In this document: positions 8,870 through 55,920 of the stretch, piece by piece | Layout: each line of letters opens with the position of its first letter | Position numbering within the stretch: position 1 is the first letter of the stretch | DNA from: Rhodosorus marinus CCMP1338 | Taxonomy: Eukaryota; Plantae; Rhodophyta | DNA: 64,000 nucleotides | Assembly (NCBI GenBank): GCA_029953675.1 | Contig: JAMWBK010000001.1 | Coordinates: 62,001-126,000 of the forward strand | Direction of reading: 5' to 3' | The notes under the pieces: generated by a model | What the model saw: only the letters and a program-made list of their open reading frames with translations | Databases searched by the model: none | What the model was told of the DNA's origin: nothing | Position numbers and translations under genes: made by a program

Positions 8870-9103
8870 CCTCGAAGGGAATAGAGCCTCCACGCAGAGG
8901 CTATTGACTATTTATCAAGGAAAGATATGAATATGTATTGAAACCCATCAAAAACGCATCAGGAGCATATAACAGCAGAAGAAGCCCCCTTTCCCCGTCC
9001 AGGGACACCCACTCGTCGTTGCTAGCTTTCCAGCAAGCCTAACGGAAAGTGTCCTCTTACCAGATATTCGTAATGGGGGGTTAAGGTTATGTTAGTCTGG
9101 GCT

Positions 9104-28537: not shown

Positions 28538-29828
28538 ATGCCGGTACTGACTGTGTTGGAGTTTTTCCATGGGATCGGTGGCCTGCGTGCGGGTCTCGAG
28601 AAGGCAGAGCAAGTACACTCAAACGAATCTGGGCCTAGATCTTCCATACCTCGAGACTTGCTAATCATCGATCACGAACATGTCTTTCTCCTCAATTTTT
28701 CCAGGAAATCGCGCTACCAGTTGTTACGGAAGTCACCGCAGCGTTCGACATAAGCTCGATCTGCGCAGATACGTACAACCACAATTTCGAGCCTGGAAAG
28801 TATGCGGCTTTGAAAACGGAACGCTTCATTTCAGAAGACGTCGAAGGTGTTTTATTCTAATCCTCGCATTCCAACGCTTGTACACCAGAAGGACTTTCAC
28901 AAGAGACGTAAAATCACTACCAGACAGCTTCTTCATCGAGAACCGCTCAGATCTTTGGACGATGTCACCTCCTTGCCAGCCGTACACCAAGCGAGGAAAG
29001 GAACTGGACGCAGCTGACCCCCGAGCAGCTGGCTTGAAGCGGTTAACGAATGTTCTGCGAACATGCCCATCTGCCGCGCTTCCGTTTGGCATTCTCTTGG
29101 AGAATGTCCCAGGTTTCGAGTCTTCTCACTCACTCAGTGAACTACAAGACAGCTTGAGAATCCGCGGGTTCTCGTTCGTGAAGCATGAGCTCTGTCCTAC
29201 CCAGTTTGAGATACCGAACAAAAGAAAAAGGTTCTACCTTGTCGCAGTCAAGTCGACGAAGTCTAACATACTTGGAACAGCCCGCGACCCCCCAGGAGGA
29301 CACACGGAGCGTCGCCTCGAAGAATTTTTGTTCGGAGATCCTGAGAGAGACTATTATGAGGAGGAGTACAAACTCCCTGCTCATTACCTCCGGTATCAAG
29401 CTGCTCTGGATGTTGTCACCCAGTCTAGTACGGAGTCCGATTGCTTTACTGGTGCGTACGGGAGGTGAGCATGAGACACTTGATGAGCAAACAGTGCATT
29501 GGATGAAGGATGATAACTTGTCCGATCGGATCCGAAAAGATAACTTGCTTAGCGGAAAACGTCCTGAGATTATGTTACGGCACATTTGCCTTCCAGGTAT
29601 GCGAAGGGAAGCGGAAGCGTGTTGAGCTGCGGAAGCCATGGCATGAGGTTGTTTTCATCGAAGGAGATCACTCGACTACACGACTTTCCAGAGCTCTTCG
29701 AGTACCCGCAGCACGTCAGCGAGTTAAAGAGGTACCAGCTTGTAGGAAACAGCGTCAATGTCAGGGTTGTCGCCGCGCTTAGCAAGGACTTGCTCTACGC
29801 CGCGGCTCAAGCTTCGCAGAGTTCATGA
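28538..29828 (+). CDS. DNMT2: DNMT2/TRDMT1 tRNA (cytosine-C5) methyltransferase, 4 exons
   Basis: Exons 28538-28612, 28705-28799, 28889-29464 and 29597-29828. EFFHGIGG (motif I), MSPPCQPYT (catalytic Cys), LENVPGF, PNKRKRFY, DNMT2-type CFTGAYGRY, RYQLVGNSVNV. Confidence 0.92.
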
Positions 29829-30200: not shown

Positions 30201-31839
30201 CTACGGTTGGAACTCGGTATGCCTATGTGGCGGGACAATATAATTACAAACTAGGCATTCAACGATCCAGTCCCAGGTGACCGGGATCATCTGACCTCGG
30301 TTGACGAATTTTCGTAAATGCATCGGCGGTGTTCTGTCCGTGGCGAGGTACATAGGGTCGTCCGCCGTGCAGACGAGTGAAGGTCTACTTAATACATGGG
30401 CCCCAGCTATGAACAGGATGCTCTCTGTTCTATTGCGTGCTGCCAGTGTCTTCATCTGAACAAGGAAGCACATCCTCGCGAATACCCGATCAGTGGGTGG
30501 GGTTGCCGTAGGAAACAATGAGCTGGTTGTGGTGAAGGATTTCGGAGCCTTCTCTGTCTTTGCGGTTCCTGGAGAGATGTGGTAGCTGGTGGGTTGTCGA
30601 AACAAGTACGGCTTAGACCTCAAAAATACAGCCGAGACCCGATCCATACCCGGCAACTTACCTCTTCGTACTGACCACGCTCCTCTGCTCTGCACAGGCT
30701 GCAACCCAGGCCATACTCAGAATAGGCAGTCGCGCGGCAAGAGCGTGCAGAAATTTCTCGGTTCTTGATGGGGACTCTGCGATTAAAACTACCGCCACCC
30801 CGCCATCCTCGATGGCCTCTACAAAGTCTCCTACATTCTCAAGTATCATGCCTCCCAGCCGAGCAACCTCCTCATGTAGATATCCTTTCGAAGCTTTCCT
30901 TGCAAGGCTGTCCTTGTTCAGAGTCATCCCAAACCTGATCCCATTAAATACACGTCCCTCACTTTCCTCACCCTCCATTCGGACTTTCTTCGTTCGCCGC
31001 CTACCTGTCCGCGCACCAACCCATCCCGTCAATCCGGATGGGGGGCGTGCACCCTTCTTCGAAAGCTCAAGCTGAGCATTTCTAAGCTCCATGACCTTAT
31101 TTGATGGCATCAGAGTCTCGTCAGCTTGCTCTACTCTGCCACTCCGCGTCCTCTTTCGGCGTACGAGTCGAGTCTCCTTTTGATGGATTTCAGTAGCGTG
31201 CAAGGTTCCTGCGACTTGCTTGCCGTTTTCCGTTTGGGAAACGACTAGATCTGATGCTGTCTGTGCGTCGAAGGTATCAGACTCCTTTGCCGTTTCCATC
31301 ACTAGTATCTCATCCTGCGTTTGAGTTTTGATTTCGACTTGATATTTCGCCGCAGCAGCCGTTGCCTTGTGGTCCTGCTTTGGTTCTTCTTTGATGGTCT
31401 GCTGGACTTGGATTGTGGAGTTGACTGACTGTGGAGGCTGTATTTGGCTCTCATAATTCGCTTCAGATGCTGTCATTCCGGTTGCCGCAAAGTCCGGAGC
31501 AGTTCCTTCCGTTTCTGCCAGGACAGGGTTCGGGCCCTCACCCCTGCAATCATCCGTCAAACCGGTGTCCGTGTCCTCCACCACAGTATCAACCAGCTTC
31601 CTACTCACACGATCAGCTACTTTTACTTGCTTGGAATTTGACCCTCTTTGGCTACCCATCTCGGCCACCGCAGCCGTACTAATTTCTACCTGCACAATAT
31701 CCGCAACGTTCGTTGACAATGTCAACCTCGCAGACGGGATCGGTAAACTACTCGGCACCACATCATCAGCTGAGATACCACTGCCAGTCTCTTTAGGACT
31801 TGGGGTCCCCTCAACTTCTTCCGACATCGAGTCTTCCAC
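30201..31839 (-). CDS. C-terminal tandem-BRCT protein (53BP1/Rad9/Crb2-like checkpoint mediator), 2 exons
   Basis: Exons 31839-30662 and 30585-30201 (76-bp gtaagt..cag intron). Long acidic low-complexity N-terminus. BRCT1 ..LIAESPSRTEKFLHALAARLPILSMAWVAAC; BRCT2 ..VTWDWIVECLV. Confidence 0.75.
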
Positions 31840-34800
31840 TCCAGTGCATCTTCTTCAAACCCGCACTTTCGCGTCAACCACGTTGGGCAGCAATGTGCAA
31901 ACCTCCAACGCTGTGCCGTCAATACAAATTCTACTCCGGTGGCAAGCGCTTAGAATAGAGCCATCACTCGTTTCGCTGCACCTTGGCCGGCTTAGAAGCC
32001 CATAATCAATGTTCACTGAAGCTGCCTTTGACGAACGCGCTCAACGATGAAAACTCTGCTGCTCCCAAGCCAAGAGCTGGAGGACAACCTTTACCACGGC
32101 TCGCGTGGCTGAGCATGGAGTCCGATTGAGTTGGAGGTAGAGGAATAGACTTTGCATTGCAACAAGAAATAGGTACAGGAAAGCTTGTTGGTAAAGTCAG
32201 GGTTGTCGTTCATGTGTGAGCTCTAGTGCTTCGACTCAATTTGTTCATTGAGTACGATCGAAGTCTGTGCTAAAACAACTGCCTGAGCAGTTACTCAGAA
32301 TCATTGCCACCATGTGGCTGAGAGTCATGAGCAGACAGAATTGGAATAATTCGCTCGATAAATTGGCCAACGACGTGCAGCTTATTAGCTATGCCGCACT
32401 GACCAAAACCTCCCGACGAAGTGGCTAGAGCACCGCGTCTATCCACCGCACGCCGGCACTGGCAAAGCCAGAGCAGCCTCCAGAAAGAGCAGCAAAGAAG
32501 GACAAGTCGGATCCCGGTAGGATTTCGGAAATGCCAGTATACGATAGAGATACCCCTCACTCCGACCAACAGACAACTCTTCGAATCAATGGTATCTTCT
32601 GGTCAGAAGAGTCCTTGTTCAGAGCGTAGATACTCGCAGTGGACAAATCCACCGGAGGTCGGAGATTACGGGCATCCATAAGATGATCTTCATCGTCGTG
32701 AAATCTGTGATGAAGTCGAGAAGCTACCTTTGAGTAGCGACAAACAACCCGAAGCGAAAATGATTGCATACATGCTTAATGACTAACATCAAGAAAATGA
32801 TTGATGAAAATAGATTGAACTTAAGCAAAAATGATTAGATTTTGTGGTTTTTCAATTGGCCGTGATCGAGCAGAACTGCTCAGCTTGTCTCCAGCTACCA
32901 TTTGAATACGGATGCGCGAAATGCGAGAAAGACGAGTGGTGGTCCAGGACTCCTGTTTCCCACTCTGTTCCTTGTTCGTTCATGCTTTTCTTCAGAGTTT
33001 CGGCTATGTTCCTTGTGCGCGAGTAGGTTGATGTTTGAGAGTTGTGGTTGGAACTTTCTACAGAACGGACTTTTGTTTCTTTGATGGCCCTGAGAGGCAC
33101 GCGTTCATTCAAAAATACCGGCACGATGGTCGATTTGGAAGCCAAGCCTTCGAAGTTGCTTGGGCTGTGCTATCGGGTCCATACATTCTGAAACTCGCAC
33201 CTCCAACAATACTGAAATGGAGAACGCAGTTCGAATTCAGTTCTTCTATGCAAACCCCAGAACAAACACGTTGGTCGTCCGGTTGGAAATGTCTTGCTCA
33301 TCCGGGCCGATCGTCTCCGCCAAATCTTGTAACGTCATCGCAAAGTGTGCTGTCGACTTATTTTCAGGATCCTCCACGCACGTACAAAAAGCATTCCCCA
33401 CTGAATTACAACTCGGCCATCCTGGAGCACTACCATGAAATTTCGCAACGATGTGGAACCTGCAAAATCCGGGACATCTCCACTGGATTTTACGTTGCAG
33501 CAACATACAGACCACCAGCGCTCCGCTAAATTGTCAAGGGGAACGGTGCGAGAGAAAACATGCCGCCACACCAAGGTCGTTGAATAACCGAACTGATCGA
33601 AATTCAGCGTTTCCCGGTAAAACAACAGTTACACTTATCTTTTTGCTTCAATTTCGACTTTTTCGAATTTAGTGTTGGAATGTGTTAGCAGTGGCTGGGT
33701 TAGACTTGCGTACGGTTCGGCTACACTGTTGGGGTTACGCAGCCCCAGGGCTTGAGGTAGCAGCAGTAAACAAAATCTGATAGTCAAAACCCCGTCTCAA
33801 TCAACGTCGGATTTTGCTTCTCCAATCCTCCAGTCAGCATCATAGAAAAAACAGCGACCATGGTTTCACTATGGATCCATACAAAACCCCTGGTTCGCAG
33901 TCGATTGGGGAAACGTTTCTGAATGAACAGGGAACAACGTTCTCGAGTCACAGCCGACTCGGTTCAACAGCTTTCCAACGCAAAACTTTTGTTCTCCGGC
34001 TTGAAGTTGGCCGGGTTGGAAGGCGTTCGTTGCTTTGCGCGGATTTAAGTTGTTGCCCAAGCCACGTAGTATAACTTGAATACGAGCTAAGAAAACGTTC
34101 TTACCCGTTGGTTTGTGCTAACGCTGTGAGATTTGGAAGTTGAGAAATTTGTTTAACAACGTTCCGCTCTCTTCATAAAAACGTCTTGGCAAAACTGCTT
34201 TTCCTATGTTGCTAAACACCACGTAGGAACCCATAACGTGTCCTGCTCTGCTATCGGCGGGGGCTGGGGCAGTTCCGTTCGAGACATGATTCCTACCCCA
34301 ATCGCCAGCTGACCCCATATTTACCTCCATAAACGGGGTGGTCCTAGGACTGTATATATGGAGGATGCATACTCAGGTCAACAAAAAAATTCGAATGTGG
34401 ATCGAACCTCAGACTGCGGGGGACTCAATTTTTTCTCGGTGTCTGGAACTGATGATTTGGAGAGTGCTTCGCAACCACTTTCAATTTTCAACACGATTTT
34501 TTTGGTAGGCAATTGATCTGACGAGCTGGGTCGGTGTCAACAAATTCCTCCCTCACACGCTCCCCACCAAATTTCTTCATTTCCGACATGAATATCAAGC
34601 ACAGGGTCATGTGTAGTTGTCGAATCATAAACCCACAAGAGACAACTTAAAAATACAACCAAAATGAGTTAGGGACATATGTACGGAATCATTCCTCCAG
34701 AGCATAATCTATATCGCGACAGGTCAATAAAAAAGAATTTTCAGACAATCCTTGGTATATTTTTGCGAATATCCCAAATTAAGATATATTTTTCTAGATC

Positions 34801-36447
34801 AGCGTCTTAACTTATCGTCCTTTTTCTCATCCAGTTCCATTTCGCAACCGCCCTCTGGGCTTTTTGTACTGGTTTTGTTCTTTGGAAATAATATCAGTTT
34901 TTTGATCGCTTGTCTACGGTGAAGAATAAATTGTATTCTATTTAAGGTCAGGAACGACCTTCACCTCCGGAAAGGGGAAAAACAAACTCCAATCATCAAT
35001 TTAAGGAAGACACTAATTTACTCTAAATCATGAATAAATGAAGATTCCTTGAACCCCTTGAACCCGAGACAAAAAGACCCAACCGCAGTTTTTGATAAAA
35101 TTAAGTGGTTCATGATTTGGATCAAGCCAATAGTAGACGAGTAGCCAGCCCGCTCAACCACCCCTGAATTCTTTTCCATAAGTCGAAGTTGACGAAGGGA
35201 ACCGAAAAATCATCTGTAAAATGTTACGATCAATGTGATACTTCAAACTGAAGCTAAAAACGTCTGGTTCTCCATGGCCTCAATGATTTACGCGATAGAC
35301 AGTCGACGTTGGGGCTTATGGTAAATATTGCTGGGCCCAAATCGACGGAAAGCTGCATTGGTCTCCAAGAGCCTTTTGTAACTAGCGAAATCAGTTAATT
35401 CTAGACGGCAATCAATTTCATAGGGGGGTTTTTTTTTTATTGCTCTATTCCAAAAAGCTCGCAGAACACCGTATGCCATTCAAAAACAGAAACCTTCACC
35501 CCCCAGTGAGTGGTGTCCATGAACATACCGCTCGCAGGTCAACCCTGGCTAGTCTGAGGGTGCAGGAAGCAAGATATTTTGATACTCCCGGAGAAGAGAA
35601 AGCAACACCGAACGTGTTTTTCATGTTTGGTGAAAAAAAGAACAGTTTAACACCAGCTTAGTTACGGCTTAAAATTAACCCCCTTTGGAAACAACCAATC
35701 ATCGTCGATGGAAAATTAGTTGGTTACCCATGGATCTGAGCAAACCCTTCGTGTTCGACGGAAAATATTTTCGTTTTTCCGTTCTGCTCTCGAATTCATC
35801 CAGAAAGACACTACCCAATGAGAATCGCAAGTTCGGGTTTGAAGTCTTCTGTTCATCGATCTACTATCATAATCGTTGATACCAAGGACAAGTATTATCC
35901 CTTTTCTCTGATCGCTTGCACAGTTCCTATACTCCCCCCCTCTCCCTCGCGCCCCCCCCACCCCGTCCAACCCGCCGCCGTGAAATGCCGCACAGAAAAA
36001 ACAAAGGCGAGAGACTCCAAGGACTTGGACTCCCGCCCCCTCCGCTTCTCCCGGATTCATGTTATCATAGATTCCAATTTTTCCACCAGTTCCACTTGGG
36101 TACTGCTTGTCAGTTTGAACTCCTCGAGCCCTCCCCTTGCGAGCACTGGACTTCGTGAGGAAATCCTCCAAGCCCGAGAAACCGCTGGCATTTGGTGCAA
36201 GATCGGAATTCTCCACGGCTGACCCAGCGGTGCGGAGAGGAATTGACAAATTCTGCAGCTTGGATCCGAATTAGCAAGCTAGGGAATCGGTGGCTCAGAA
36301 CCCTGCCCTAAGTCACCAATCCCACAGCATACACTGTTCGACACCCCAGAGGTTGCGGAAGTGGCCATGATTGCCCAAAGATGATAAGGCTACCAGTAGT
36401 TGCTAAAGCCCTTATATAATTTTCAAATTTGTGGCAGCCTCGTGACA

Positions 36448-36603
36448 ATGGCTTCTATACCCATCCGATTCTCTGAGGTGGTCAAAATTATCCGCTTGTT
36501 CACCTGGCCCTCGTAGTGTGACACGACGGGCTTCCAAGATATATACGAAAGCCTGGGAATCATCCATTCAGAAAGATATTGGCACCATCGTTCAAGAGGT
36601 TAA
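36448..36603 (+). mobile_element. Possible Ty3/Gypsy integrase-core relic
   Basis: One frame reads EVVKIIRLFTWPS*CDTTGFQDIYESLGIIHSERYWHHRSRG*, resembling the IVRLHG.P.SIVSDRG..F...L...LGI.H.....YHPQ..G pattern. Short and degenerate. Confidence 0.3.
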
Positions 36604-37809
36604 AACATGATGGGGTGGATTGGATCAAGATGGAGGTCGCAATGCCTTTCTCAACCGTTCGACTTTGATCGGAAACAAACGCCAAGAATGTGAATTGCTT
36701 TGAATTTTAAAGGGACTGAGTCGACCCCCCCAGTCGACCCCTACAAAGAACCAAGAAACCCCCCCCCAAAATATTACCCCTTTTGTTTAGCCATCCAAGA
36801 AAAATCGTTGCCGTGAAATACATCAGTTGACGATCCAGCATCAATAAAATAACTACGATTCAATTATTTGAGCGGACGCACCATGTGCATTCTCTTCGTA
36901 CCCGCTTTCAAAAGGGACCAACTGGATGAAAAAATAAATGAAAACAGTATTTTCTATTATATTCATTCTCCTACAGAGTTTTCGATTATTCTTATTGGTT
37001 ACGGCAGTATAGATTACAGAAGAAATAAGCCGCAACGAGGATCGCGACTCCATACAATTCAATTTTACAAAATATATCGAAGGCATTCATGAATTTCGGA
37101 ATAAAAACTAAGCAGGGAACCGGGGCTGGATCGGTTCAAATTGTTTTGTATTCAGGTGTTGAAGACCTCGTCATTTGTTTGTCAATTCCATGCTTGGAAA
37201 CAAATCGGCGAAAGAATCCAATACCGTCTTTAGATTTTACGAATTTTCAAAGGTTATGTCAATTGCGAGTGTTGCTACCAATCAACCGCTGTGCTTTTCT
37301 AGTATGCTTTTCGGTTAAAAAGCCGTTTTCGTGTTGACCCGAGTGCTTAGTCCAGCTTCTGCTAGGTCCCGGGAAGAGCAGTGAGGGGGGTTGTAGAAAT
37401 GTGAAATTAGCTGCGAAACTCGTTTTCAATACTAATTAACGCATTTTCACGTGGCAAGACTAACGTAACGTAACCCCAGACTAAGCGTTCCAGTTCGAGC
37501 CATGCAAGGTTACCAGGAACTTTGGAAAGGGCTCGACTATATATGTTGACGGGAAGCTAAGTCGTCAAGCTTTGCTTCCTCGCAGCGGTTGGCCAAACGA
37601 GCTAAGGGCAACCAGGTGGTAGAAGGACATTTTCGGGACTTGCTCTTTAGGGGTTCGACTGTGGTTGAATTTTGGTATGGTTGGTGGCAAGAGCTGATGC
37701 CATAGTACGAGCTGGGAAGTTTGCTAGGCTTGCCTCGCAAAATCTTCGTGTGAGTCTGAGGGCTCTATAGCTTCAGGTGTCTGTTGGTAGTAGACTGGAA
37801 ACAAGCAAC

Positions 37810-40329
37810 ATGGGAGCGATTACTTTCTCATCAATTTCGGCCGTCTTGTTGATGATGATGGCAGTTGGGGCGGTTGATGTCGAGGTTGATTTGTATTGCC
37901 CCCAATCGATCGGAGGGGAGACCCAATGGACGCCCGACAAGTATAACTCCGGGCACTGGACAGTACAGGGGAGTGGGATGTCGACGTCAAGCTTAACGTA
38001 CTTGATGAAAAACCTCGGCGCGACAGAGGGAAGAACCGGAAGGGGCGTATTTAGAAGGGGAGATCCTAGTGCTATTAAGACCCTCAGCTCCAGTAAACTC
38101 GAGCCAAGGGCGGCTTTCAATGAAAAGCTCTGCACAAGGGGCTATCCGTGCCAGAGTCTTGGTGGATCTGACGAGATTGTGATGGCGGATGGGGGCGAGC
38201 TTCTGGACTACATTGAGGAGAACAATATCTCCGATAAAAGATTTGGGGAATACACGGCACTGTTCCTTCCTATGCTACAGAACAAGCAGGCGAACGTTAA
38301 GTGCCCAAAGTACTTGGAACCGGTCAACGAAGGGATGGTGTACAAGGACCCCAAGAGGTATATGAGCAACCCACCGAATTCACTGCGAAAAGCGGCGTTT
38401 ACCAGGATCGCCAAGTTTCATAAGGCAGTCTGCGACGTCGTGAATTCCAAGCTGAGCAATAGTGGCTGCAACACCCTATGTGGTGGGTGGGCTTCTGGTT
38501 GGTCGGATCTCGTGAGACAGAGGTTTTTGGCGTATGAGAATAGACTGGTACCCTTTACGAAGGAAGCTGGACGTTCGATGAAGTTTTTCTCCTTTCACAC
38601 ATATGACTCATACAAGCAGAGCGCGGGCGAAGTACTAATGCAAGGCGGGCATCAGGAAGGATTGATGGATTTGGTATGGACGCACACGAGAAATGAACTG
38701 GGCAAGCCGATGCCGATCGTATTCAGCGAATTTGGTGCTGGCTCCAACGAGGTCTGGTTCGTATCATCGAACGGAAAGGTCAAGAGTCAGAAGCTCAAAA
38801 CCGCGAGACCTTACTGCGCCACACGAGACTGGGCGATTCTCAACTCATTCACAGGAATGATGTCCCAGTTCTCGGCTCATCCAGACCTGATTCTGAAGAC
38901 AGTTGCCTTCGTGCATGAAGCGACCTACGACGCAAAGGGGAACCCATACCCATGGAGTTTAGAGAGAAAAGTGAATGGGAAGACTGTTTGGACTCATCTC
39001 ATCAAATTCTTCGAAATTATGGCAGGCGTGAAGGGGCACTACTACCGAGTTACTACCAAGAACACCAAAGTTCAAGTTCACCTGCTGAGGAACGGCAACA
39101 CATTCTGGGTAATGATGAAGAATTTTTCGAGGAACAATCAAAATCTCAACCTCGATTTCATCGATGGACTTCCGACATTGGGCTCTGGCAGTGAGTTGAG
39201 AAGCTTGCGCCTCAAGGCCTCATCGAGTACCGTCCAGTGCGCGAGAGAGCATAAGCTTCCCTGGTCCGGCGTACCGGACCTCTCCACTCGGAAGCTCGGC
39301 AGCGCATCAGACGTCCAGAAGCTTATGAACAATTACGAGATGACAGGAATGGAGTTTGCAATACTCAAGCTCCCCTTGCGAGTTTCACCAAAGCCCAGGA
39401 GAAGTTCCGTGGTGAAGCGGCATTTTAGCAACCGCGAAGTTGTGAAAGTCTTTCAAAGCTATGGAAAGTCGAGCACGGGCACGGAGAAGTTCACCTTTAA
39501 TAACCTGCCAAGTGGAACAGGCAACGTCAAAGTAAGGGTAGCAGTCGGTGGCTACAGCGAAGTTCTGAAGGTGAAATGCGATGCAACGCTGAACGGAGTC
39601 AAGCTCTCGAGACCAGATAGTTCTTTCGGGCCGGAAAATGGCGCTGAGTCCCGATGGATGATGTTCGAATACCACGCGTCCATGGCTATTGTTAAGAGTA
39701 GTTCAGTTGTCGCTGTGACATGTAGCTGCAACTGCAACAAATTCACGGGGCACGTTAGCTCGGTTACCATGCTCACGGAGCAGCTAACTGGAGGGGGTGG
39801 TTCTATTGTTGTGCCAGAGCCCGAGGACGATGATGACGAGGTCGATGTGCCAACGAAGCCCGATGTCGGTGGTGGTAACAACAAAGGCGATAGCGGGAAA
39901 GATGATGACAAGAACGATGGGGGTGGTTTAACTCCCTTCTCTGGGAGTTTCAAGAATGGAGACTTTGAAAATGGTCTGTCTGGATGGACCAAGTCATCGG
40001 CGAGGAAAGTCAAGCTTAGCAAGACCGCAAGCAAAGGAAAAGGGGCGATGCTTATCCGAGGTGTAGCCTCTGCGAAGCAGGTCTTTAGGGTGACAAGCCG
40101 GAAACGCGTAGCCGTATCAGTGGACATGAAGATCAATAGCAAGAAGGACAAGTGCGAGATTCGGATAGTGCAAGGCGAAAAGGTTATTGCACGTCAAGCT
40201 CAGCGGAAGAATGGTTGGGGTCGGAAGACATTGTACTTCAAGGCCAGCGGTGCCGTTGACATTCTACTCTACTCTGGCAGCTCGAGTAGCAAGTGCTTGT
40301 TCGATGAGATTTCAATCAAGCAGAAATAA
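37810..40329 (+). CDS. Secreted glycoside hydrolase family 86 (beta-porphyranase/beta-agarase-like) with C-terminal CBM4/9-like module
   Basis: Intronless, ATG at 37810 (839 aa). Signal peptide MGAITFSSISAVLLMMMAVGA. GH-A-type EPVNE and FSEFG glutamates, SFHTYD, RDWAILNSF..MMSQF..HPDLILK and THLIKFFE..GVKG match the GH86 pattern as recalled. Acidic/Gly linker, then NGDFENGLSGWT module. Confidence 0.8.
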   Translation: MGAITFSSISAVLLMMMAVGAVDVEVDLYCPQSIGGETQWTPDKYNSGHWTVQGSGMSTSSLTYLMKNLGATEGRTGRGVFRRGDPSAIKTLSSSKLEPRAAFNEKLCTRGYPCQSLGGSDEIVMADGGELLDYIEENNISDKRFGEYTALFLPMLQNKQANVKCPKYLEPVNEGMVYKDPKRYMSNPPNSLRKAAFTRIAKFHKAVCDVVNSKLSNSGCNTLCGGWASGWSDLVRQRFLAYENRLVPFTKEAGRSMKFFSFHTYDSYKQSAGEVLMQGGHQEGLMDLVWTHTRNELGKPMPIVFSEFGAGSNEVWFVSSNGKVKSQKLKTARPYCATRDWAILNSFTGMMSQFSAHPDLILKTVAFVHEATYDAKGNPYPWSLERKVNGKTVWTHLIKFFEIMAGVKGHYYRVTTKNTKVQVHLLRNGNTFWVMMKNFSRNNQNLNLDFIDGLPTLGSGSELRSLRLKASSSTVQCAREHKLPWSGVPDLSTRKLGSASDVQKLMNNYEMTGMEFAILKLPLRVSPKPRRSSVVKRHFSNREVVKVFQSYGKSSTGTEKFTFNNLPSGTGNVKVRVAVGGYSEVLKVKCDATLNGVKLSRPDSSFGPENGAESRWMMFEYHASMAIVKSSSVVAVTCSCNCNKFTGHVSSVTMLTEQLTGGGGSIVVPEPEDDDDEVDVPTKPDVGGGNNKGDSGKDDDKNDGGGLTPFSGSFKNGDFENGLSGWTKSSARKVKLSKTASKGKGAMLIRGVASAKQVFRVTSRKRVAVSVDMKINSKKDKCEIRIVQGEKVIARQAQRKNGWGRKTLYFKASGAVDILLYSGSSSSKCLFDEISIKQK

Positions 40330-41728
40330 TAGGCTAAGATTGGCGATTAACTTTGCACCAGCACCTCTTACTCAAGGGGTGCAGGTTGTAACTTTAGGCA
40401 GAATAACAGTGCCAAACAGCACAATGTGAATGTAAACACTAAAATGATTTAATCGGAAAGTCGCAAATGACCTCTCACAAAATAGATTGTCTAAAAAGCA
40501 CGCCCCACGAGATATTCCGTCTGTGGGCTGTACATACAAAATACGTGGAAAAGAGGTGGTTTGAGGTAGGTGCGCTAGGAAGTTGAAGCACGAGTATTTG
40601 CAAGAATGGGAAGTGCAATCCCGGCATAGGTTCGTGCCTCCGACGCGAATAAGCCACGTTGCGATCAGAGGACTAGGCATCATGGAACTCCCGAATAAAG
40701 AGTTTTTAACACGTCGTACGACGAGTCCGGCAACTACGAGTTTGCTGTTTCGAGCTTGGCTCTTTTGTCTCGTTGGATATTCGGGTGCCGGCTATTGGAA
40801 GCGACTGTTCCTCTTCAATTCAAGAGATCAGTCCTCTACTGATCCGTTCAACAGCAGTACATCAAAGCGCACTTCAACACGACGAAACCATTGTTAACAA
40901 ATGGATCTCATTCAAACCAATCTCAGCTTCCGAAAGAAACACGTCAATCATCGTCTAAACTAAAGATGTCTTAGTGTGTTTTCGATGGGTTGCTTCGAAT
41001 ACACGTTTCTCCCATAATCTGCCGTGCCGTCAGCTCGTTCGTTCATACTGGTGATGCGTGCTGGCGTCAGCTCCGTGACGTATCTATCGTCCTCTCCATT
41101 GTGTTCTGACTTTGACTTGTAGACCTTAACATAAACGTACCTCACGAGTCTCAACAAGACTAACCTTCAGAACATTCGAAATCCAGCCAGAAGAAGTATA
41201 AGACATTGGCATTGTTCATTTATGGAAGAAAAGTATTGTCCAAAACAAGCAAAGGGTCTACATCACCTGGACCGTCAGCGAACCCCGTCATTATTCCTAG
41301 TTTCAGATAAAAATTCGGATGCTCTTCAGCGGTATGAGAAAAGCCGGTTTATTCAGGCGCTCGGGTTCTATTTATGGTGCTGCTGAACCGGATATACATT
41401 GGGGTGGGGCGCTGATAGTGCTAGTGGATACTGTCCGAGTATTCTGTTCCATAGGCAGAGTTGTTCATCAGCTGTTCTCCAGTGCGTGACGGCTTCCCGA
41501 TTTGCATCCGCTTGAGCCCTGCTGTTTATCGGGATGATGAGTATTTAAACAGGGAGGCATAGTTGAGGGCAAAGAACTTCAGGAGTCTGCGAATGTTCCA
41601 ACGGGATGGGAGGGTCAAGTGAGGAGCAAGGGTGTAGAAGGAGATTACAGAGGCGCTTGCTTAGGTTTTTACTTGTTTCCTATTGGCGGGGAATTGAGAT
41701 TGATTAAGTTCGTTTGAGTATCTGGGAA

Positions 41729-42755
41729 ATGCGCCTAGAGACGAAAGAGCAGTCCCCCGGGACCGAAGTCTGGCCCACTCCGAGCATGAAAAGGTTCCTT
41801 GAAATTCTCAAGAAATTATATGATCCTGAGAACTACGACAAGATACTGGCGTACCAGCCGCAGCAGTCTGAAGTGTTCATCGCAACCTTTGGGAAGAGCG
41901 GGACGACGCTCATCAGCCAAATGTGTCACCAGTTGAGGACGGGGGGGCATATGGATTTTCAAGAAATTAGCGAGGTGTGTATGAGCTGGTACAAATCTTT
42001 CGCTCTCAGATACAAAACTGACTTTATAGTGTGTTCGACCAAAAAAACAACATCTACAGATGGTTCCCTTTCTGGAATTGGCATATGACGTCGGAATTGA
42101 TCCGAATAGAGAACAGATTGCGGAACCGAGGCTCACGAAGACACATCTGGACCATGATCGTTGCCCTAAAGGGGCGCGATACATAGTCGTTCTGCGTGAC
42201 CCGGCTATGGCTTTGGTTTCCTACTATAACTTCAAAGCCGGTTGGTTTTTCCGCCCGGAAGAAATCTCAGTTGATGAGTACGTTCAAACCGTTCACCTGA
42301 AGGAGCCCGAGCCAGCCACTCAGAGCTGCTTCTGCCCTGTGCACAAGTTCTTTGAGTCTTGGTGGCACCATCGGAACGATCCAGACTACCTCTTCCTCTT
42401 CTACGAGCACATCTTGGCTGACCCTGAAACTGCCGCGAGAAAGGTAAACAAATTTATGGGACTTGATGATGATGAAGAAAGAATCCAGAATGCCGTTCGC
42501 ATGTCGAGTCGCGAGTACATGTTGGAGCACGGGGACCAGTTCGACGAAGGTTTGACCAGGAAAGCCAAAGCACATCTCGGTTCGTTGCCGAATGGCAACA
42601 GTTCGAAAGTTCTTCCAAAAAATTTTCCGAAACCAAAGCTCTCTGCAGAAACTCTAGCTGAATTGGACCGGCTCTGGAAGCTCATCGTTCAGCCTACAGC
42701 GGGCTACGCTACCTATGATGACATGCTAAAAGACAATCCAATGTGCCCATCCTAA
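41729..42755 (+). CDS. PAPS-dependent sulfotransferase (Sulfotransfer_1 type), 2 exons
   Basis: Exons 41729-41974 and 42060-42755 (85-bp intron). 5'-PSB loop TFGKSGTT, PRLTKTHL, 3'-PB RDPAMALVSYY, FLFYEHILADP. Confidence 0.9.
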
Positions 42756-48824: not shown

Positions 48825-50312
48825 TCATATTCGCACGGTATGAGCCTCCTCCACAATGGAATTCCAATTCTTTGGCCACTGCGGTTGCAGCCAATAACTT
48901 AAAAAGCTCCAAAATCCACGAACTTTGCGGCCCATCCCCATCTCCCTCATGAGGTCGTCATGATAGTAAGGACTATGCGCTTGTACAATAGTTGCTCTAT
49001 ACCTCTCAGTTGGATAGAATCTCCTTTTACTCGCCTTCATCTTCCTTAGATCCTCCTCCATCTCCTTCCTCTTCGGCATCGGACGGTCCCCTGCCAGTAA
49101 CTGAGCAAGCCAGACGCTCTGAACGGTATCGGTGAACGGGTTTACGTACGACGAGCAGTTCGACCCAACGAATGCCAAACCATTTACAGTGGTAGGTAGC
49201 ATGTTTTTGTAAAGGTAGAGACCGTCTTCATCAGGTTGCAATCGTTTCCCAATGTCTCCGTCGAAGATCTGGAATGTGTAGTCCCATCCAGTCGCCAAAA
49301 CTATCAGATCTGCTTCCAGGACCTTACCATTGGCGAGGTTTGCCGTTTTGCCCTCAACCTCGGATACTGTAGTTTTGTACACTCTTATCTTTTTCTTCCT
49401 CAGCGCCTTGAGGTAGTTGATATCGGACACCGACGTTCGGGTTGAATGAGCTTCGTGAAGTAACGAGGTGTTTGGCCAAGCACTAAACGGGATTCTGAAA
49501 GAAACAAGAAGCGCGATTTCGAAGAGTTTGAGGAGTGGCCATTTGACGGGAGTGAGGAGCCAATGGAGAGCTTGGGTGACACGGTTTCCGTGATAGAATG
49601 GGGACAAGAATAGGAGCAAGCCGCGCGTGAAGAAAAGCCTTCCGTTATTAACCGGCCCGAGGTATAGGGGGACGGTAAAGTATTTAGTACGGCCAACGTG
49701 AGAAACGCTTTTTGCCACGGTCGAGGCTGTCGTTGCGGCGTCAATCCCGCTCTTTCCCGCTCCGACTACCACCACGTTCTTTCCCGCGAAAACTTCCGTG
49801 GACCGATATTCTGAAGAATGAATGAGCTTTCCCTGAAAGTGTTGCTCTCCTTCTAGCTTGATTCTATTCGGCTTGTCTGAGTATAGCCCATTGCACATCA
49901 CCAAGTACGCGAACTCCTCGATTCTACTTTCCCCAGTCGTCAAGTCCTCGATTGACAAAGCCCAGCTTGAATCCTCCAACTGCAGGACGCTGGTGACCTT
50001 CGATTTGAACCGGAAACTATCTCGAATCCCGTTCGCATCAACAAATGTCTCCAAATACTCACAAACCTGGTCCATAGAGGGATTGGCGTCCACGTCATCC
50101 TTAAACCGTTGCTCCGGATACTCGTACAAATAGTGAGGCAGTTGAACACAGGCCCCATAGTAGTTGTCTACCCATAATCCGCCGACACGATCCTTGCTCT
50201 CAAACACCACACATTCAATTCCCCTCTTGCGAAGCGCATGACACGCCGCCACTCCAGCCACTCCAGCTCCAATCACCGCTACTCTCTTGTATCTCCTCCT
50301 TTCAGTCTCCAT
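48825..50312 (-). CDS. Flavin-containing monooxygenase, copy 1
   Basis: Intronless, ATG at 50312. IGAGVAG (FAD), GGLW, FQGKLIHSSEY (FxGxxxHxxxY), VVGAGKSGID (NADPH), LATGW. Confidence 0.95.
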   Translation of the reverse strand: METERRRYKRVAVIGAGVAGVAACHALRKRGIECVVFESKDRVGGLWVDNYYGACVQLPHYLYEYPEQRFKDDVDANPSMDQVCEYLETFVDANGIRDSFRFKSKVTSVLQLEDSSWALSIEDLTTGESRIEEFAYLVMCNGLYSDKPNRIKLEGEQHFQGKLIHSSEYRSTEVFAGKNVVVVGAGKSGIDAATTASTVAKSVSHVGRTKYFTVPLYLGPVNNGRLFFTRGLLLFLSPFYHGNRVTQALHWLLTPVKWPLLKLFEIALLVSFRIPFSAWPNTSLLHEAHSTRTSVSDINYLKALRKKKIRVYKTTVSEVEGKTANLANGKVLEADLIVLATGWDYTFQIFDGDIGKRLQPDEDGLYLYKNMLPTTVNGLAFVGSNCSSYVNPFTDTVQSVWLAQLLAGDRPMPKRKEMEEDLRKMKASKRRFYPTERYRATIVQAHSPYYHDDLMREMGMGRKVRGFWSFLSYWLQPQWPKNWNSIVEEAHTVRI

Positions 50313-51058
50313 CCCACCCACAAAGAAAATACAAGAGCTAAAGCAAAGACTATGCCACTCTCTCCTCCCCTCTGCAGTGTGAGCCCCTCAAACCTCACGC
50401 GCTCTACATCTGATTTGTAAGTACATTAACGAAGCAGCGTTCGCCTCCGCAAACACGTGACCGTGTCCGAATACGTTCTGGTAACTAACTCTGAGTCAAT
50501 CAAGTACGTGCCGCCAAACTGATACTGGCGAGGTGTTGGTGGGTGGAAGGGTTGAGTAGGGTTTGAGACTAGGTGTGTGATAAGAGCTTATCATTCAAGC
50601 AATTAATATCCAGGGTTTCTCCTCGTTGTACCGGAAATAGTGTAATCGCTGCGATAGGCTGGACTCCTCATTACAATCTCTTGAACGTGTCCTGGGTTTA
50701 ATATTTTCATTGTCTCACGGCTGGGGCCTCTGGGGAAGGTAGTTAATGTTTGATTAAAGGGTTAATCTGATATCATATGACATCTTGGAATGTGGCTGGC
50801 GGGTTTGTAGTTCCAGCAACGCGGTGCCTCGTTGAAGTCGCAAAGGTTAAGCGAGTTTGAAAAATCTCAGGTTTGGCCGCACGCAATCCGTTCTAGTCCC
50901 GCGCTGTCACGGTTCAGCAGCCTCTCTGGCGCAAGGCTTGGCGGTTCCCCTTAAGACTTACGCATGACCACAACTTGTTTTACGATCATGATCAAAGTGG
51001 GATTCAGATAATAGATTGACGACGATCGCAAGCAATCCTTCACCAAGTTCAGTCCATG

Positions 51059-52549
51059 TTATGCAGAAAGTGTACGTTTTTTGTGCGCCTCTTCCATGAT
51101 GCCCTTCCACATTCTTGGGTAGTTTGGTTTGAACCAGTAGCTGAACCAGCTACGGATACCTTTTCCGCGCCGCGGACGGATGCCCATTTCACGGATGAGA
51201 TCGTCGTGGTAGAAATTACCGTGTGCTCCGTACACAGTTGCACGGTTTCCGCCAGGGTAGTACTTGCGTTTAAACTCCTTCATCCTGTCCACGTCGTCTC
51301 CCATATCGCTCGGGGATGGCAAAGCTCGGTCGCCGGCGATTAGTTGGGCAAGCCAGATGCTCTGGACAGATGCTGTGAAAGGGTTCGTATAGGTCGACGT
51401 ATTGGATCCGATGAACGCCAAGCGCTCCACGTTCACCGGAATCATATTCTTGTACATGTACATACCATCCTGCTCAGGTCTAAGCCTTTCGATGGTATCT
51501 TTCTCGAAAATTGGAAAGTCATATTCCCATCCAGTGGCCAGAACGATGACATCTGCTTCCACAGTTTTGCCGTTGGCGAGGACCACTGAGTTGGCTGTTA
51601 CATGTTCAATCGTCGTGTGTTCAAGTTCGAAGTCACGTTTTCTTATCGCGCTCATGTATTTGTGATCCGTTACGGTCGCCCCAACCGTGAAGATTACGTG
51701 TTGAAGTGAAACGTCTGGCCATGCACGGAAGGGTAGGCGGCTTTGAATTAGCATCCCAGCTTCCATGAACTTGAAGGTAAGCCACTTGAACGGTCTGAAG
51801 AACCAGTGTATCCTCTTCGCGTACGTCGGCGTCCGGTAGTAAGGAGGTAGGACGAGGCAGACAGCCCGACCAAAGAAGAGCGGGGCGAGCGGGATACCAA
51901 GCAGATTCTCCGGAACGGTCCACATCCTTGTCCTTGCAATCTGAACAACGTTTTCTGACACAGGACATGCAGATACAACAGTATCAATTCCGCTCTTCCC
52001 GCTTCCTACGACAATTACTTTCTTCCCCGAAAATATTTCAGTTGAGCGGTATTCGCTCGAGTGTATAATATCTCCTGCGAATTCTTTCTGCCCTTTCATC
52101 TCAGAGCGGTGGGGAATTCTCGAGAACATGCCGCTACAGACAACGAGGTATCCATACTCCTCCACAGCCTTTTCTCCGGTCTCGACGTCCTCGATCTCCA
52201 GTTCCCATCGGGAATTTGCGAGCTGCCTTGCCATATGAATGGATGCACCAAATCTGAGATTTCCTCGAATACCGCTCTTATCGATGAACTTGTCCAAATA
52301 GTCCGTCACCTGGGCCATTGTGGGGAAGCGGCCAACATCTTCAGGGAAGCGGAGCTCGGGATACTCAAAAAGAAACTTTGGCGTCTGAACGTGTGCGTCG
52401 TAGTAGTTGTCCACCCACAAACCACCCGCACGAGCTTTCTCCTCAAAGACCACACACTCCACGCCCTTTTGATGTAGAGCATGGCAAGTCGCCAGGCCGG
52501 ATACCCCGGCGCCAATTATTGCAACACGATCAATCTCCTGGATGGCCAT
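51059..52549 (-). CDS. Flavin-containing monooxygenase, copy 2
   Basis: Intronless, 496 aa. IGAGVSG, GGLW, FAGDIIHSSEY, VVGSGKSGID, LATGW. Confidence 0.95.
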   Translation of the reverse strand: MAIQEIDRVAIIGAGVSGLATCHALHQKGVECVVFEEKARAGGLWVDNYYDAHVQTPKFLFEYPELRFPEDVGRFPTMAQVTDYLDKFIDKSGIRGNLRFGASIHMARQLANSRWELEIEDVETGEKAVEEYGYLVVCSGMFSRIPHRSEMKGQKEFAGDIIHSSEYRSTEIFSGKKVIVVGSGKSGIDTVVSACPVSENVVQIARTRMWTVPENLLGIPLAPLFFGRAVCLVLPPYYRTPTYAKRIHWFFRPFKWLTFKFMEAGMLIQSRLPFRAWPDVSLQHVIFTVGATVTDHKYMSAIRKRDFELEHTTIEHVTANSVVLANGKTVEADVIVLATGWEYDFPIFEKDTIERLRPEQDGMYMYKNMIPVNVERLAFIGSNTSTYTNPFTASVQSIWLAQLIAGDRALPSPSDMGDDVDRMKEFKRKYYPGGNRATVYGAHGNFYHDDLIREMGIRPRRGKGIRSWFSYWFKPNYPRMWKGIMEEAHKKRTLSA

Positions 52550-55153: not shown

Positions 55154-55277
55154 TTTGGAGTTCAATATCAATACCCGCGCCAACTTCGTACAATCCCTAC
55201 CGTTGATTATGTCGTAACTATCCAGCCTCTCAAACAATCATTTGTATTTCCACACTCTTACAATAAGAAGCAATGAT

Positions 55278-55850: not shown

Positions 55851-55920
55851 TGCGAAAGAGCGGGAACGGAGGAGGGGTAACGAAACTCATGGATGTGTAT
55901 ATAGAGCAGGTCTTGAGTGA

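What the first reader, a model, noticed from the sequence alone, without database searches (positions are those of the whole stretch)
37810..40329. Intronless, secreted GH86 porphyranase/agarase-like enzyme in a eukaryotic (probably red algal) genome
Seen: an 839-aa single-exon ORF with a signal peptide, both putative catalytic glutamates (NE, SEFG), GH86-like conserved blocks, an acidic linker and a CBM4/9-like module, in a window where most conserved genes carry spliceosomal introns. Known: characterised GH86 enzymes are bacterial agarases/porphyranases (e.g. Bacteroides plebeius BpGH86A), and the red algal porphyranase I know of (Chondrus crispus) is GH16. Inference: an endogenous enzyme for remodelling the alga's own sulfated galactan wall or matrix, either acquired from marine bacteria or a eukaryotic GH86 lineage. 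I cannot tell whether it has already been described.
Basis: partly seen in the sequence, partly recalled or inferred. Interest (0 to 1): 0.8.

Follow-up and report, generated by a model that had tools for sequence, protein, structure and literature searches.

The report
Red-algal secreted GH86 galactanase gene
A real, expressed, intron-free nuclear gene of the one-celled red alga Rhodosorus marinus encodes a secreted enzyme of family GH86, until now characterised only in bacteria that digest red-seaweed agar and porphyran; it belongs to an alga-specific family of at least six such genes, probably used to cut the alga's own sulfated galactan coat.

Summary
Window 37810-40329 (+) is one 839-aa ORF: signal peptide, GH86 catalytic barrel with both catalytic glutamates (E174 in NE, E307 in SEFG), two beta-sandwich domains, an acidic/glycine linker and a C-terminal carbohydrate-binding module (CBM). 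All three solved GH86 enzymes match over their full length.

The window is Rhodosorus marinus CCMP1338, a Stylonematophyceae red alga, on a 3.8-Mb nuclear contig. Contamination is excluded:
- The downstream neighbour has a GT-AG intron.
- Codon use matches the neighbouring genes.
- A transcript from another Rhodosorus strain is colinear with the genome, with dN/dS 0.16.

New here: this is not a lone gene. R. marinus has at least four genomic GH86 genes plus two further transcript lineages. Bangiopsis and an unidentified sample have more. All 13 sequences form one clade apart from bacterial GH86 (93-98% NJ bootstrap). This fits one old bacterial acquisition followed by expansion.

The CBM best matches a porphyran-binding CBM16 structure. 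Stylonematophyceae carry a cell-bound, highly sulfated, galactose-rich polysaccharide, so remodelling of the alga's own wall is the likeliest role. That role and the substrate are untested.

The protein is deposited only as 'hypothetical protein', and I found no paper on GH86 in red algae. It is a new member of a known enzyme family in an unexpected host.

The parts
37523..37809 (+). Probable 5' UTR / transcribed leader
   Evidence: The MMETSP0011 Rhodosorus transcript (L010) aligns to window 37595-40493 in one 86%-identical HSP, with a short extra 5' match at 37523-37558. Inferred from a sister strain, not from this strain's RNA.
37810..40329 (+). Complete single-exon CDS of the GH86 protein (839 aa plus stop)
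   Evidence: ORF; identical to a gene called in GCA_029953675.1; full-length 87%-identical transcript product P0002.
37810..37875 (+). Signal peptide (aa 1-22; cleavage inferred near AVGA|VDVEV)
   Evidence: Hydrophobic core. Homology to mature bacterial GH86 begins at about residue 23. Cleavage site not predicted with a dedicated tool.
37876..39066 (+). GH86 (alpha/beta)8 catalytic domain (aa about 23-419)
   Evidence: Profile alignment to 8H97, 5TA1 and 4AW7. Residues invariant across red-algal and bacterial members: R75, N173, E174, H263, Y265, E307, D340, W382.
38329..38331 (+). Codon of E174, predicted catalytic acid/base (EPVNEG)
   Evidence: Aligns with the NEP motif of all GH86 homologues.
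38728..38730 (+). Codon of E307, predicted catalytic nucleophile (FSEFGAG)
   Evidence: Same column as BuGH86 E322, which is Q in 5TA0 (PMC5849685).
39067..39414 (+). First Ig-like beta-sandwich domain (aa about 420-535)
   Evidence: Weak Pfam Porphyrn_cat_1 hit at aa 421-473. Above cut-off in P0006, P0008 and P0086, weak in the other paralogues. Covered by the PDB profile alignment. Boundaries approximate.
39415..39789 (+). Second beta-sandwich domain, equivalent to BPA_C (aa about 536-660)
   Evidence: Aligned to the C-terminal domain of 5TA1, 8H97 and 4AW7, including the conserved N-G...P...G...VSSV motifs. BPA_C is above cut-off in eight paralogues. Boundaries approximate.
39790..39945 (+). 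Acidic / glycine-rich low-complexity linker (aa about 661-712)
   Evidence: Sequence read directly; pLDDT below 50; variable length among paralogues.
39946..40326 (+). C-terminal CBM16 / CBM_4_9-like carbohydrate-binding module (aa 713-839)
   Evidence: Pfam CBM_4_9 and DUF642, with best E-value 8.6e-9 among members. Model of this module alone: pLDDT 82.3. Best single-domain PDB matches are 8XMZ, a porphyran-binding CBM (TM 0.75/0.73), then CBM16. 8XMZ is also the best sequence-profile hit, E 2e-4.
40330..40493 (+). Probable 3' UTR
   Evidence: Colinear with the 3' end of the sister-strain transcript.

Best explanation
This is a bona fide nuclear gene of Rhodosorus marinus. It encodes a secreted, retaining endo-beta-galactanase of glycoside hydrolase family GH86, the beta-agarase / beta-porphyranase family.

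How it would work: the signal peptide sends the protein through the secretory pathway to the cell surface. The C-terminal CBM16-like module, on a flexible acidic linker, docks it onto a sulfated galactan. The (alpha/beta)8 domain cleaves internal beta-galactosidic bonds by the clan GH-A double-displacement mechanism, with E174 as acid/base and E307 as nucleophile.

The most likely substrate is the alga's own cell-bound, highly sulfated, galactose-rich capsule or wall polysaccharide. The most likely role is loosening or turnover of that wall during growth, division and release of daughter cells.

The gene is one of at least six GH86 paralogues in Rhodosorus. It belongs to a Stylonematophyceae-specific GH86 clade that most likely descends from one ancient transfer from a marine bacterium, followed by duplication and adaptation to the eukaryotic host.

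Shown: family membership, catalytic residues, domain architecture, genomic authenticity, expression in a sister strain, purifying selection, the paralogue family and its monophyly.

Inferred: secretion, endo-galactanase activity, substrate identity, physiological role, and the direction and number of transfers.
For: Family and catalytic machinery:
- PDB sequence search: single sequence 1e-16; profile 7e-66, 3e-64 and 3e-53 against 8H97, 5TA1 and 4AW7 over all three GH86 domains.
- Fold search of even a low-confidence model ranks the 7 GH86 chains first (E 4e-26 to 6e-22). The next family is GH30 at 5e-13 with a poor TM-score.
- NE and SE motifs are conserved in all clade members.
- Canonical GH-A -1 subsite residues are invariant.

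Authenticity as a nuclear gene:
- It lies on a 3.8-Mb contig of the long-read R. marinus assembly (PMC10250338).
- The neighbouring sulfotransferase has an 85-nt GT-AG intron.
- GC3 is 0.61 against 0.51-0.60 in neighbours. RSCU correlation with the pooled neighbours is 0.68, at least as high as any neighbour against the rest.
- There is no excess of bacterial promoter or terminator motifs.

Expression and selection:
- The MMETSP0011 transcript is 87% identical at protein level and colinear with the genome without gaps.
- dN/dS is 0.16 with dS 0.42.

Gene family:
- Paralogues sit on contigs 12 and 6, the latter with two genes 6.7 kb apart. Further Rhodosorus transcripts, Bangiopsis CCMP1999 and four sequences from one unidentified sample add to the set.
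- The 13-member clade has NJ bootstrap 98%, 92.5% with Dayhoff-6 recoding and 93% on the slowest 70% of columns.

Adaptation to a eukaryotic secretory route: the catalytic region holds 1.41% cysteine against 0.34% in 132 other, presumed mostly bacterial, homologues (p = 1e-7). Hydrophobic N-termini occur throughout the clade.

Substrate clues:
- The CBM's best PDB match by sequence and by fold is a porphyran-binding CBM.
- The nearest bacterial homologue sits in a locus with sulfatases, GH16 and GH2.
- Stylonematophyceae polysaccharide is cell-bound, 18-29% sulfate and up to 78-87% galactose (PMC9031348).
Against: - No enzymatic data exist for any member of the red-algal clade. Identity to characterised GH86 enzymes is only about 20-28%.
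- The residue at the base of the -2 subsite pocket separates porphyranase (Ser in BpGH86A) from agarase (Met in BuGH86). It is His369 here and Leu/Leu/Ile in the closest relatives. Specificity therefore cannot be read off and may differ from both.
- The polysaccharide of Rhodosorus itself was not analysed in the paper cited. Its linkage pattern, agar-like or not, is unknown.
- The window protein is the most divergent clade member for the Pfam GH86 accessory domains and for the CBM model.
- The sister group of the algal clade is unresolved (support 0.01 or less), so no donor can be named.
- The trees are distance-based on saturated distances of about 1.5. Long-branch attraction among the eukaryotic sequences is not excluded.
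- Expression evidence comes from a different strain, not from CCMP1338 reads.
Confidence: 0.6

Rival explanations
1. The enzyme targets foreign red-algal galactans rather than the alga's own wall. It would digest agar or porphyran of macroalgal hosts or neighbours, for attachment or epiphytism, for scavenging carbon, or for competition. In effect it would keep the ecological job it has in bacteria.
For: Every characterised GH86 and the nearest bacterial homologue serve catabolism of exogenous agar or porphyran (PMC5849685). The CBM resembles a porphyran-binding CBM from a marine bacterium. A family of six or more secreted paralogues with varied CBMs resembles a degradative arsenal. From general knowledge, not tested here: many Stylonematophyceae grow on seaweeds.
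Against: No companion catabolic genes (GH117, GH2, sulfatases) lie next to any of the algal genes examined. Rhodosorus is a phototrophic unicell. Stylonematophyceae themselves carry a tightly bound sulfated galactose-rich coat, an obvious endogenous substrate.
Confidence: 0.2
2. It is a GH86-fold hydrolase whose specificity has drifted to another beta-linked glycan of the red microalgal matrix, for example a xylogalactan or a differently sulfated or methylated galactan. 'Agarase/porphyranase' would then be the wrong label.
For: The clade branches deeply (28% identity or less to any bacterial member). The -2 subsite determinant is His369, neither Ser nor Met, and varies even among close paralogues. 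Stylonematophyceae polysaccharides contain variable xylose and glucose besides galactose.
Against: The -1 subsite residue set typical of GH86 and GH-A is invariant, and the CBM points to porphyran-type ligands. No GH86 with a non-galactan substrate turned up in the PDB entries matched here.
Confidence: 0.15
3. It is bacterial contamination, a chimeric assembly join, or a dead relic of a transfer that is no longer functional.
For: The family is overwhelmingly bacterial and the gene lacks introns.
Against: It sits inside a 3.8-Mb algal contig between intron-bearing and typically eukaryotic genes. Codon use is host-like. An orthologue occurs in an independent strain's transcriptome with the same UTR structure. 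dN/dS is 0.16 with an intact ORF and intact catalytic residues. Paralogues lie on two other large contigs.
Confidence: 0.03

Closest known systems
BuGH86 (Bacteroides uniformis NP1 beta-agarase; PDB 5TA0/5TA1/5TA5) and Aga86A_Wa (PDB 8H97)
   Same: Same family and three-domain layout, an (alpha/beta)8 barrel plus two Ig-like domains. Same NE acid/base and SE nucleophile motifs. The -1 subsite residues are conserved. These are the best sequence and fold matches.
   Different: About 20% identity. The host is a eukaryote. There are 15 cysteines and a eukaryotic signal peptide. A 14-residue insertion follows the nucleophile strand relative to these enzymes. The pocket residue is His369 instead of Met. 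An extra linker and CBM are present.
BpGH86A (Bacteroides plebeius beta-porphyranase; PDB 4AW7)
   Same: GH86 fold and catalytic residues. It acts on a sulfated galactan, the kind of polymer expected in the algal coat.
   Different: Weaker match than to the agarases (profile 3e-53, positions 165-658 only). The Ser that floors the 6-sulfate pocket is His in the algal protein. No CBM in BpGH86A.
Labilibaculum sp. MAG GH86 (P0005), the closest named bacterial homologue
   Same: 28% identity over the three GH86 domains, with Pfam Porphyrn_cat_1 and BPA_C.
   Different: Encoded in a bacterial polysaccharide-utilisation-type locus with five sulfatases, GH16, GH2, GH3 and GH43. Lacks the CBM and has few cysteines.
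Porphyran-binding CBM, PDB 8XMZ (probably the CBM16 of Mei et al. 2024, Int J Biol Macromol 265:131041; that link is my inference from the titles)
   Same: Best PDB match of the C-terminal module both by profile (E 2e-4) and by fold (TM 0.75/0.73, rmsd 2.6 A).
   Different: 17% identity. Ligand-binding residues were not compared. The algal module has a conserved Cys pair (C782, C829).
   Same: Endogenous galactan-cleaving hydrolases encoded by a red alga, which is the same presumed biological role.
   Different: A different fold and family: GH16 beta-jelly roll against GH86 TIM barrel. Not examined here.

Membership tests
Glycoside hydrolase family 86 (CAZy GH86) | Significant full-length sequence similarity to characterised GH86 catalytic modules, better than to any other GH-A family | tested here: met
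   phmmer against PDB finds only GH86 entries (1e-16 to 1e-10), and the profile gives 7e-66 to 3e-53. Fold search puts GH86 chains at ranks 1-7, nine or more orders of magnitude ahead of GH30. The dbCAN GH86 HMM itself was not available.
Glycoside hydrolase family 86 (CAZy GH86) | Clan GH-A catalytic pair: acid/base Glu in an N-E motif and nucleophile Glu after strand 7 | tested here: met
   E174 (EPVNEG) and E307 (FSEFG) align with the catalytic columns of 4AW7, 5TA1 and 8H97. E307 matches E322 of BuGH86, which is Q in 5TA0. Both are invariant in 14 diverse members.
Glycoside hydrolase family 86 (CAZy GH86) | (alpha/beta)8 barrel followed by two Ig-like beta-sandwich domains | tested here: met
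   The profile alignment spans positions 20-668 of the query and nearly whole PDB chains. DSSP of the model shows beta-rich segments at 421-660. Porphyrn_cat_1 is weak in this protein. BPA_C is above cut-off in eight of nine paralogues scanned and Porphyrn_cat_1 in three.
Glycoside hydrolase family 86 (CAZy GH86) | Retaining endo-beta-agarase or beta-porphyranase activity | not testable with these tools
   Needs recombinant protein and substrates.
GH86 porphyranase versus agarase subtype | -2 subsite determinants: Ser pocket floor and Phe in BpGH86A, Met and Thr in BuGH86 | tested here: inconclusive
   The pocket-floor column holds His369 here and Leu/Leu/Ile in P0002-P0004. The N-terminal Phe/Thr position could not be aligned reliably.
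CBM_4_9 superfamily / CBM16-like carbohydrate-binding module | Match to the family model above threshold, and a beta-sandwich fold matching solved members | tested here: met
   The window protein is below the Pfam cut-off (21.9 against 25.9 bits). Paralogue P0003 and others are above it (32.2 bits). The model has pLDDT 82.3, and top single-domain hits are 8XMZ (TM 0.75) and CBM16 2ZEY (TM 0.73). Ligand not tested.
Bacterium-to-eukaryote horizontal gene transfer | Recipient clade nested within donor diversity, with patchy eukaryotic distribution | tested here: inconclusive
   The family is dominated by Bacteroidota, Verrucomicrobiota and Gammaproteobacteria. The algal sequences form one clade at 93-98%, but its sister group is unresolved. 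Only about 40 of the 150 listed hits could be assigned to organisms. GH86-like sequences also occur in choanoflagellate data.
Genuine nuclear gene (not a contaminant) | Physical linkage to intron-bearing host genes, host-like composition, and independent transcript evidence | tested here: met
   Read-level continuity was not testable here.

The most novel reading that the evidence does not exclude
Stylonematophyceae red algae acquired a bacterial GH86 once, long ago, and expanded it into a dedicated family of secreted 'autolysins' for their sulfated galactan capsule. This would mean the capsule contains agar/porphyran-type beta-1,4 / alpha-1,3 galactan linkages. That would place agar-like galactans, and an endogenous enzyme system to remodel them, in an early-branching unicellular red-algal lineage. 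It would also give the first functional eukaryotic branch of GH86.
Probability: 0.3. Interest if true: 0.65.

Novelty: new member of a known kind. Interest (0 to 1): 0.5.

Why it matters
GH86 enzymes are known as tools of marine and gut bacteria that eat red-seaweed walls. This is an expressed, conserved and expanded GH86 family inside red algae themselves.

- It gives a concrete molecular handle on how red microalgae remodel their sulfated galactan coats, a process for which very few enzymes are known.
- It adds a well-supported case of old bacterial-to-algal gene transfer followed by family expansion.
- It offers eukaryote-adapted galactanases and a CBM as probes for the still undefined structure of Stylonematophyceae polysaccharides, and as possible tools for making oligosaccharides.
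- It shows that current annotation ('hypothetical protein', no Pfam domain) misses this gene.

Tried and rejected
- Word-indexed homologue search, run three times (single sequence, 5-sequence profile, 14-sequence profile), returned the same five proteins each time. The exhaustive representative search was needed to find the family.
- The full-length AlphaFold model from the 5-sequence alignment was poor (pLDDT 52.8). I used it only for a coarse fold ranking. A deeper alignment could not be submitted under the tool's input rule.
- NCBIfam has no model for these proteins.
- No flank synteny between the window locus and the 60%-identical paralogue locus, so they are dispersed duplicates.
- The adjacent Sulfotransfer_1 gene was considered as a functional partner in galactan sulfation. 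I rejected it as evidence: it has no signal anchor and looks like a cytosolic sulfotransferase. The adjacency is merely noted.
- Intronlessness is weak evidence for transfer, because the four FMO-like genes in the same window are also single ORFs.
- The sigma-70 promoter and terminator scan showed no excess over shuffles.
- The organism behind Logan runs SRR22824282 and SRR22824290 could not be identified. Two other cysteine-rich outliers could not be assigned to a eukaryote either.
- The primary paper for PDB 8XMZ is not in the searchable library. It was linked only through a reference list.
- An HMM-score test of clade membership gave only modest support. The algal-paralogue HMM scored 252 bits, against a mean of 221 and a maximum of 252 for random sets of eight other homologues.
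- Generic beta-sandwich fold hits of the CBM to unrelated multidomain proteins were disregarded as uninformative.
Full report
**1. What is in the sequence**

Window 37810-40329 (+) holds one uninterrupted reading frame of 839 codons. The ATG is in a good eukaryotic context (A at -3, G at +4) and the stop is TAA.

The product has these parts:
- A hydrophobic N-terminal signal-like segment.
- A long region homologous to GH86 enzymes.
- An acidic, glycine-rich low-complexity linker.
- A C-terminal beta-sandwich module.

**2. Family assignment**

The protein alone, searched against all PDB chains, finds only GH86 enzymes. These are BuGH86 at 1e-16, the agarase 8H97 at 2e-15 and the porphyranase BpGH86A at 1e-10.

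A profile built from the protein and its four closest relatives matches the same three enzymes at 7e-66, 3e-64 and 3e-53. Against the two agarases it covers profile positions 20-668, that is the barrel and both Ig-like domains. Against BpGH86A it covers positions 165-658.

In these alignments EPVNEG lies on the (I/L)NEP acid/base motif. FSEFG lies on ISE(Y/F), and E307 shares its column with BuGH86 E322. E322 is the residue mutated to Gln in entry 5TA0, and the authors describe it as the nucleophile (PMC5849685).

Across 14 diverse members the typical clan GH-A active-site residues are invariant: R75, N173, E174, H263, Y265, E307, D340 and W382.

The full-length AlphaFold model was poor (pLDDT 52.8) because only five sequences could be supplied. 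Even so, the fold search ranked the seven GH86 chains first, at E 4e-26 to 6e-22. The next family was GH30 at 5e-13 with a bad TM-score.

Pfam has no catalytic-domain model for GH86. In this protein its two GH86 accessory-domain models are weak or silent. Among nine paralogues scanned, BPA_C is above threshold in eight and Porphyrn_cat_1 in three. That explains why the deposited protein carries no domain annotation.

**3. Whose gene it is**

An exact-sequence look-up places the protein on contig JAMWBK010000001.1 (3,806,663 bp) of assembly GCA_029953675.1. This is Rhodosorus marinus, and the gene is called there as a single exon.

The genome paper describes a long-read assembly of strain CCMP1338: 13 contigs above 1 Mb, most with telomeres, 8,392 genes and 24,821 introns. 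It does not mention glycoside hydrolases or CAZymes (PMC10250338).

The neighbours are ordinary eukaryotic genes. They include ABHD18, indole-3-glycerol-phosphate synthase, a C-5 DNA methylase fragment, a BRCT protein, an MFS transporter, four FMO-like genes and a DCC1-like oxidoreductase.

The next gene downstream is a Sulfotransfer_1 gene. It is split by an 85-nt GT-AG intron (exon 1 at 41729-41974, exon 2 at 42060-42755), which reproduces the 313-aa product of the deposited annotation.

Several measures show the gene is at home in this genome:
- Its GC3 is 0.61, against 0.51-0.60 for the neighbours.
- Its RSCU profile correlates with the pooled neighbours at 0.68, at least as well as any neighbour correlates with the rest.
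- Bacterial promoter and terminator motifs are not enriched.

The gene is therefore neither a contaminant nor a recent arrival.

**4. Expression and selection**

A 2,986-nt contig from the MMETSP0011 Rhodosorus transcriptome encodes an 839-aa protein that is 87% identical.

Its nucleotide sequence aligns to window 37595-40493 in a single 86%-identical segment, including both UTRs. There is therefore no intron anywhere in the transcript.

Codon-by-codon comparison gives dN 0.069, dS 0.42 and dN/dS 0.16, which indicates clear purifying selection.

**5. It is a gene family**

The exhaustive search of 1.84 billion cluster representatives gave 294 hits at E 1e-3 or better, but only eight at 1e-30 or better. 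Look-ups of the closest ones show the following:

| Sequence | Source | Note |
|---|---|---|
| NDN08_004910 | R. marinus genome, contig 12 | 60% identical paralogue, single exon |
| NDN08_000604 | R. marinus genome, contig 6 | 872 aa, single exon |
| Unnamed 1,266-aa gene | R. marinus genome, contig 6 | 6.7 kb from NDN08_000604; first 1.3 kb open, with NEP and SEMG motifs |
| P0045/P0158 and P0060 | Rhodosorus MMETSP transcripts | two further lineages |
| P0008 | Bangiopsis sp. CCMP1999 transcript | another Stylonematophyceae |
| P0006, P0007, P0025, P0092 | Logan run SRR22824290 | organism unidentified, four sequences |

Both close paralogues, the window gene and NDN08_004910, have counterparts in the other Rhodosorus strain (P0002, P0004). 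Their duplication therefore predates the split between the strains. Their flanks share no synteny.

**6. Phylogeny**

I aligned 147 sequences to an HMM of the barrel and the start of the first sandwich, giving 409 columns.

The 13 algal sequences form one clade:
- 98% NJ bootstrap on amino acids.
- 92.5% after Dayhoff-6 recoding.
- 93% on the slowest 70% of columns.

The window protein groups with its Rhodosorus relatives at 100%, and with P0006 from the unidentified sample at 96%. The position of the clade among the bacterial sequences is unresolved (support 0.01 or less).

An independent HMM-score test supports the grouping only modestly.

Named bacterial homologues are marine polysaccharide degraders:
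- Bacteroidota: Labilibaculum, Saccharicrinis, Marinoscillum, Sediminitomix and Rikenellaceae.
- Verrucomicrobiota: Lentimonas and Rubellicoccus.
- Gammaproteobacteria: Agaribacterium.

The Labilibaculum gene lies among five sulfatases, GH16, GH2, GH3 and GH43.

The algal proteins also carry about four times more cysteine in the catalytic region, 1.41% against 0.34% (p = 1e-7). They have eukaryote-style hydrophobic N-termini.

The simplest reading is one old transfer from a marine bacterium into an ancestor of these algae, followed by duplication and adaptation. There are three caveats:
- The trees use distance methods on saturated distances.
- Only about 40 of the 150 listed hits could be assigned to organisms.
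- GH86-like sequences also occur in choanoflagellate transcriptomes outside the algal clade.

**7. The C-terminal module**

Scanned alone, the modules of the four closest relatives hit Pfam CBM_4_9 in three of four (best E 8.6e-9) and DUF642 in all four.

A profile of them finds one PDB entry at E 2e-4, namely 8XMZ.

A model of the module alone is confident (pLDDT 82.3). Its best single-domain structural match is again 8XMZ, 'a novel porphyran-binding carbohydrate binding module' (TM 0.75/0.73, rmsd 2.6 A). CBM16 modules come next.

[quoted passage not shown] Linking 8XMZ to that paper is my inference.

**8. Likely function**

The shown facts point to a secreted retaining beta-galactanase tethered to a galactan-binding module.

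For the substrate, the best external clue is a survey of red microalgae (PMC9031348). It reports that Stylonematophyceae release almost no free polysaccharide. Instead they carry a tightly cell-bound polymer with 18-29% sulfate. Galactose is usually the main sugar, reaching 78% in Bangiopsis and 87% in Rhodaphanes.

A family of secreted GH86 enzymes in just this lineage fits a role in loosening or turning over that coat during growth and division. This is inference, for two reasons:
- Rhodosorus itself was not analysed in that paper, and the linkages are unknown.
- The residue that floors the -2 subsite pocket is His369 here. It is Ser in the porphyranase and Met in the agarase, and Leu/Leu/Ile in the closest relatives.

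Rival readings are listed separately with their tests: use on foreign seaweed galactans, or a drifted specificity.

**9. Known or new**

The sequence is public as a hypothetical protein, and UniProt auto-names some paralogues 'Beta-porphyranase A C-terminal domain-containing protein'.

Full-text searches combining GH86 with red-algal genera, classes or genome terms returned only papers on bacteria, or none. I could not consult CAZy.

I rate it a new member of a known enzyme family in an unexpected host, with a lineage-specific expansion. It is moderately interesting rather than categorically new.

Noticed in passing
window 48825-60658 (- strand): Tandem array of four flavin-monooxygenase-like (FMO-like) genes. 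Each is a single ORF of about 500 aa: 48825-50321, 51059-52549, 53669-55237 and 59147-60658. All appear intronless.
   Followed up: partly
window 41729-42755 (+): Sulfotransfer_1 gene 1.4 kb downstream of the GH86 gene on the same strand, split by an 85-nt GT-AG intron (41975-42059), product 313 aa. It has no signal anchor, so it is probably a cytosolic sulfotransferase rather than a Golgi galactan sulfotransferase.
   Followed up: partly
L007 (R. marinus contig JAMWBK010000006.1, record 1130519-1149137): 1-1322 (-), 8001-10619 (+), 11382-13392 (+): Two further GH86 genes 6.7 kb apart in divergent orientation, of 1,266 aa and 872 aa. Directly downstream of the 872-aa gene is a gene with a weak Pfam match to Exostosin_GT47 glycosyltransferases. 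This may be a small wall-polysaccharide gene neighbourhood.
   Followed up: partly
L004, L005, L006, L008, L009 (Logan runs SRR22824282 and SRR22824290): Four GH86 sequences (P0006, P0007, P0025, P0092) from one unidentified sequencing sample fall inside the red-algal clade. P0006 and P0092 each sit next to a different Rhodosorus paralogue lineage, while P0007 and P0025 pair with each other. The organism is probably another red microalga but could not be named.
   Followed up: partly
P0101/P0161 (Salpingoeca urceolata) and P0111 (Choanoflagellata sp. UC4): GH86-like sequences occur in choanoflagellate transcriptome or genome data sets, outside the red-algal clade. Whether they are real choanoflagellate genes or derive from prey bacteria was not examined.
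   Followed up: no
window 31900-37500: About 5.6 kb upstream of the GH86 gene has no ORF over 180 aa, and I saw no recognisable domain-bearing ORF. There are no tandem repeats or tRNAs there either. The overlapping ORFs at 43.5-44.2 kb also gave no Pfam hit.
   Followed up: partly
P0016 (Sediminitomix flava WP_109622111): A bacterial homologue that aligns as GH86 is named 'GH39 family glycosyl hydrolase' in NCBI/UniProt. This is a likely annotation inconsistency.
   Followed up: no
window 28680-29468 (+) and 30658-31839 (-): ORF fragments with a C-5 cytosine DNA methylase domain and with an RTT107-type BRCT domain. Both match only part of their Pfam profile and are probably exons of larger genes.
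   Followed up: no
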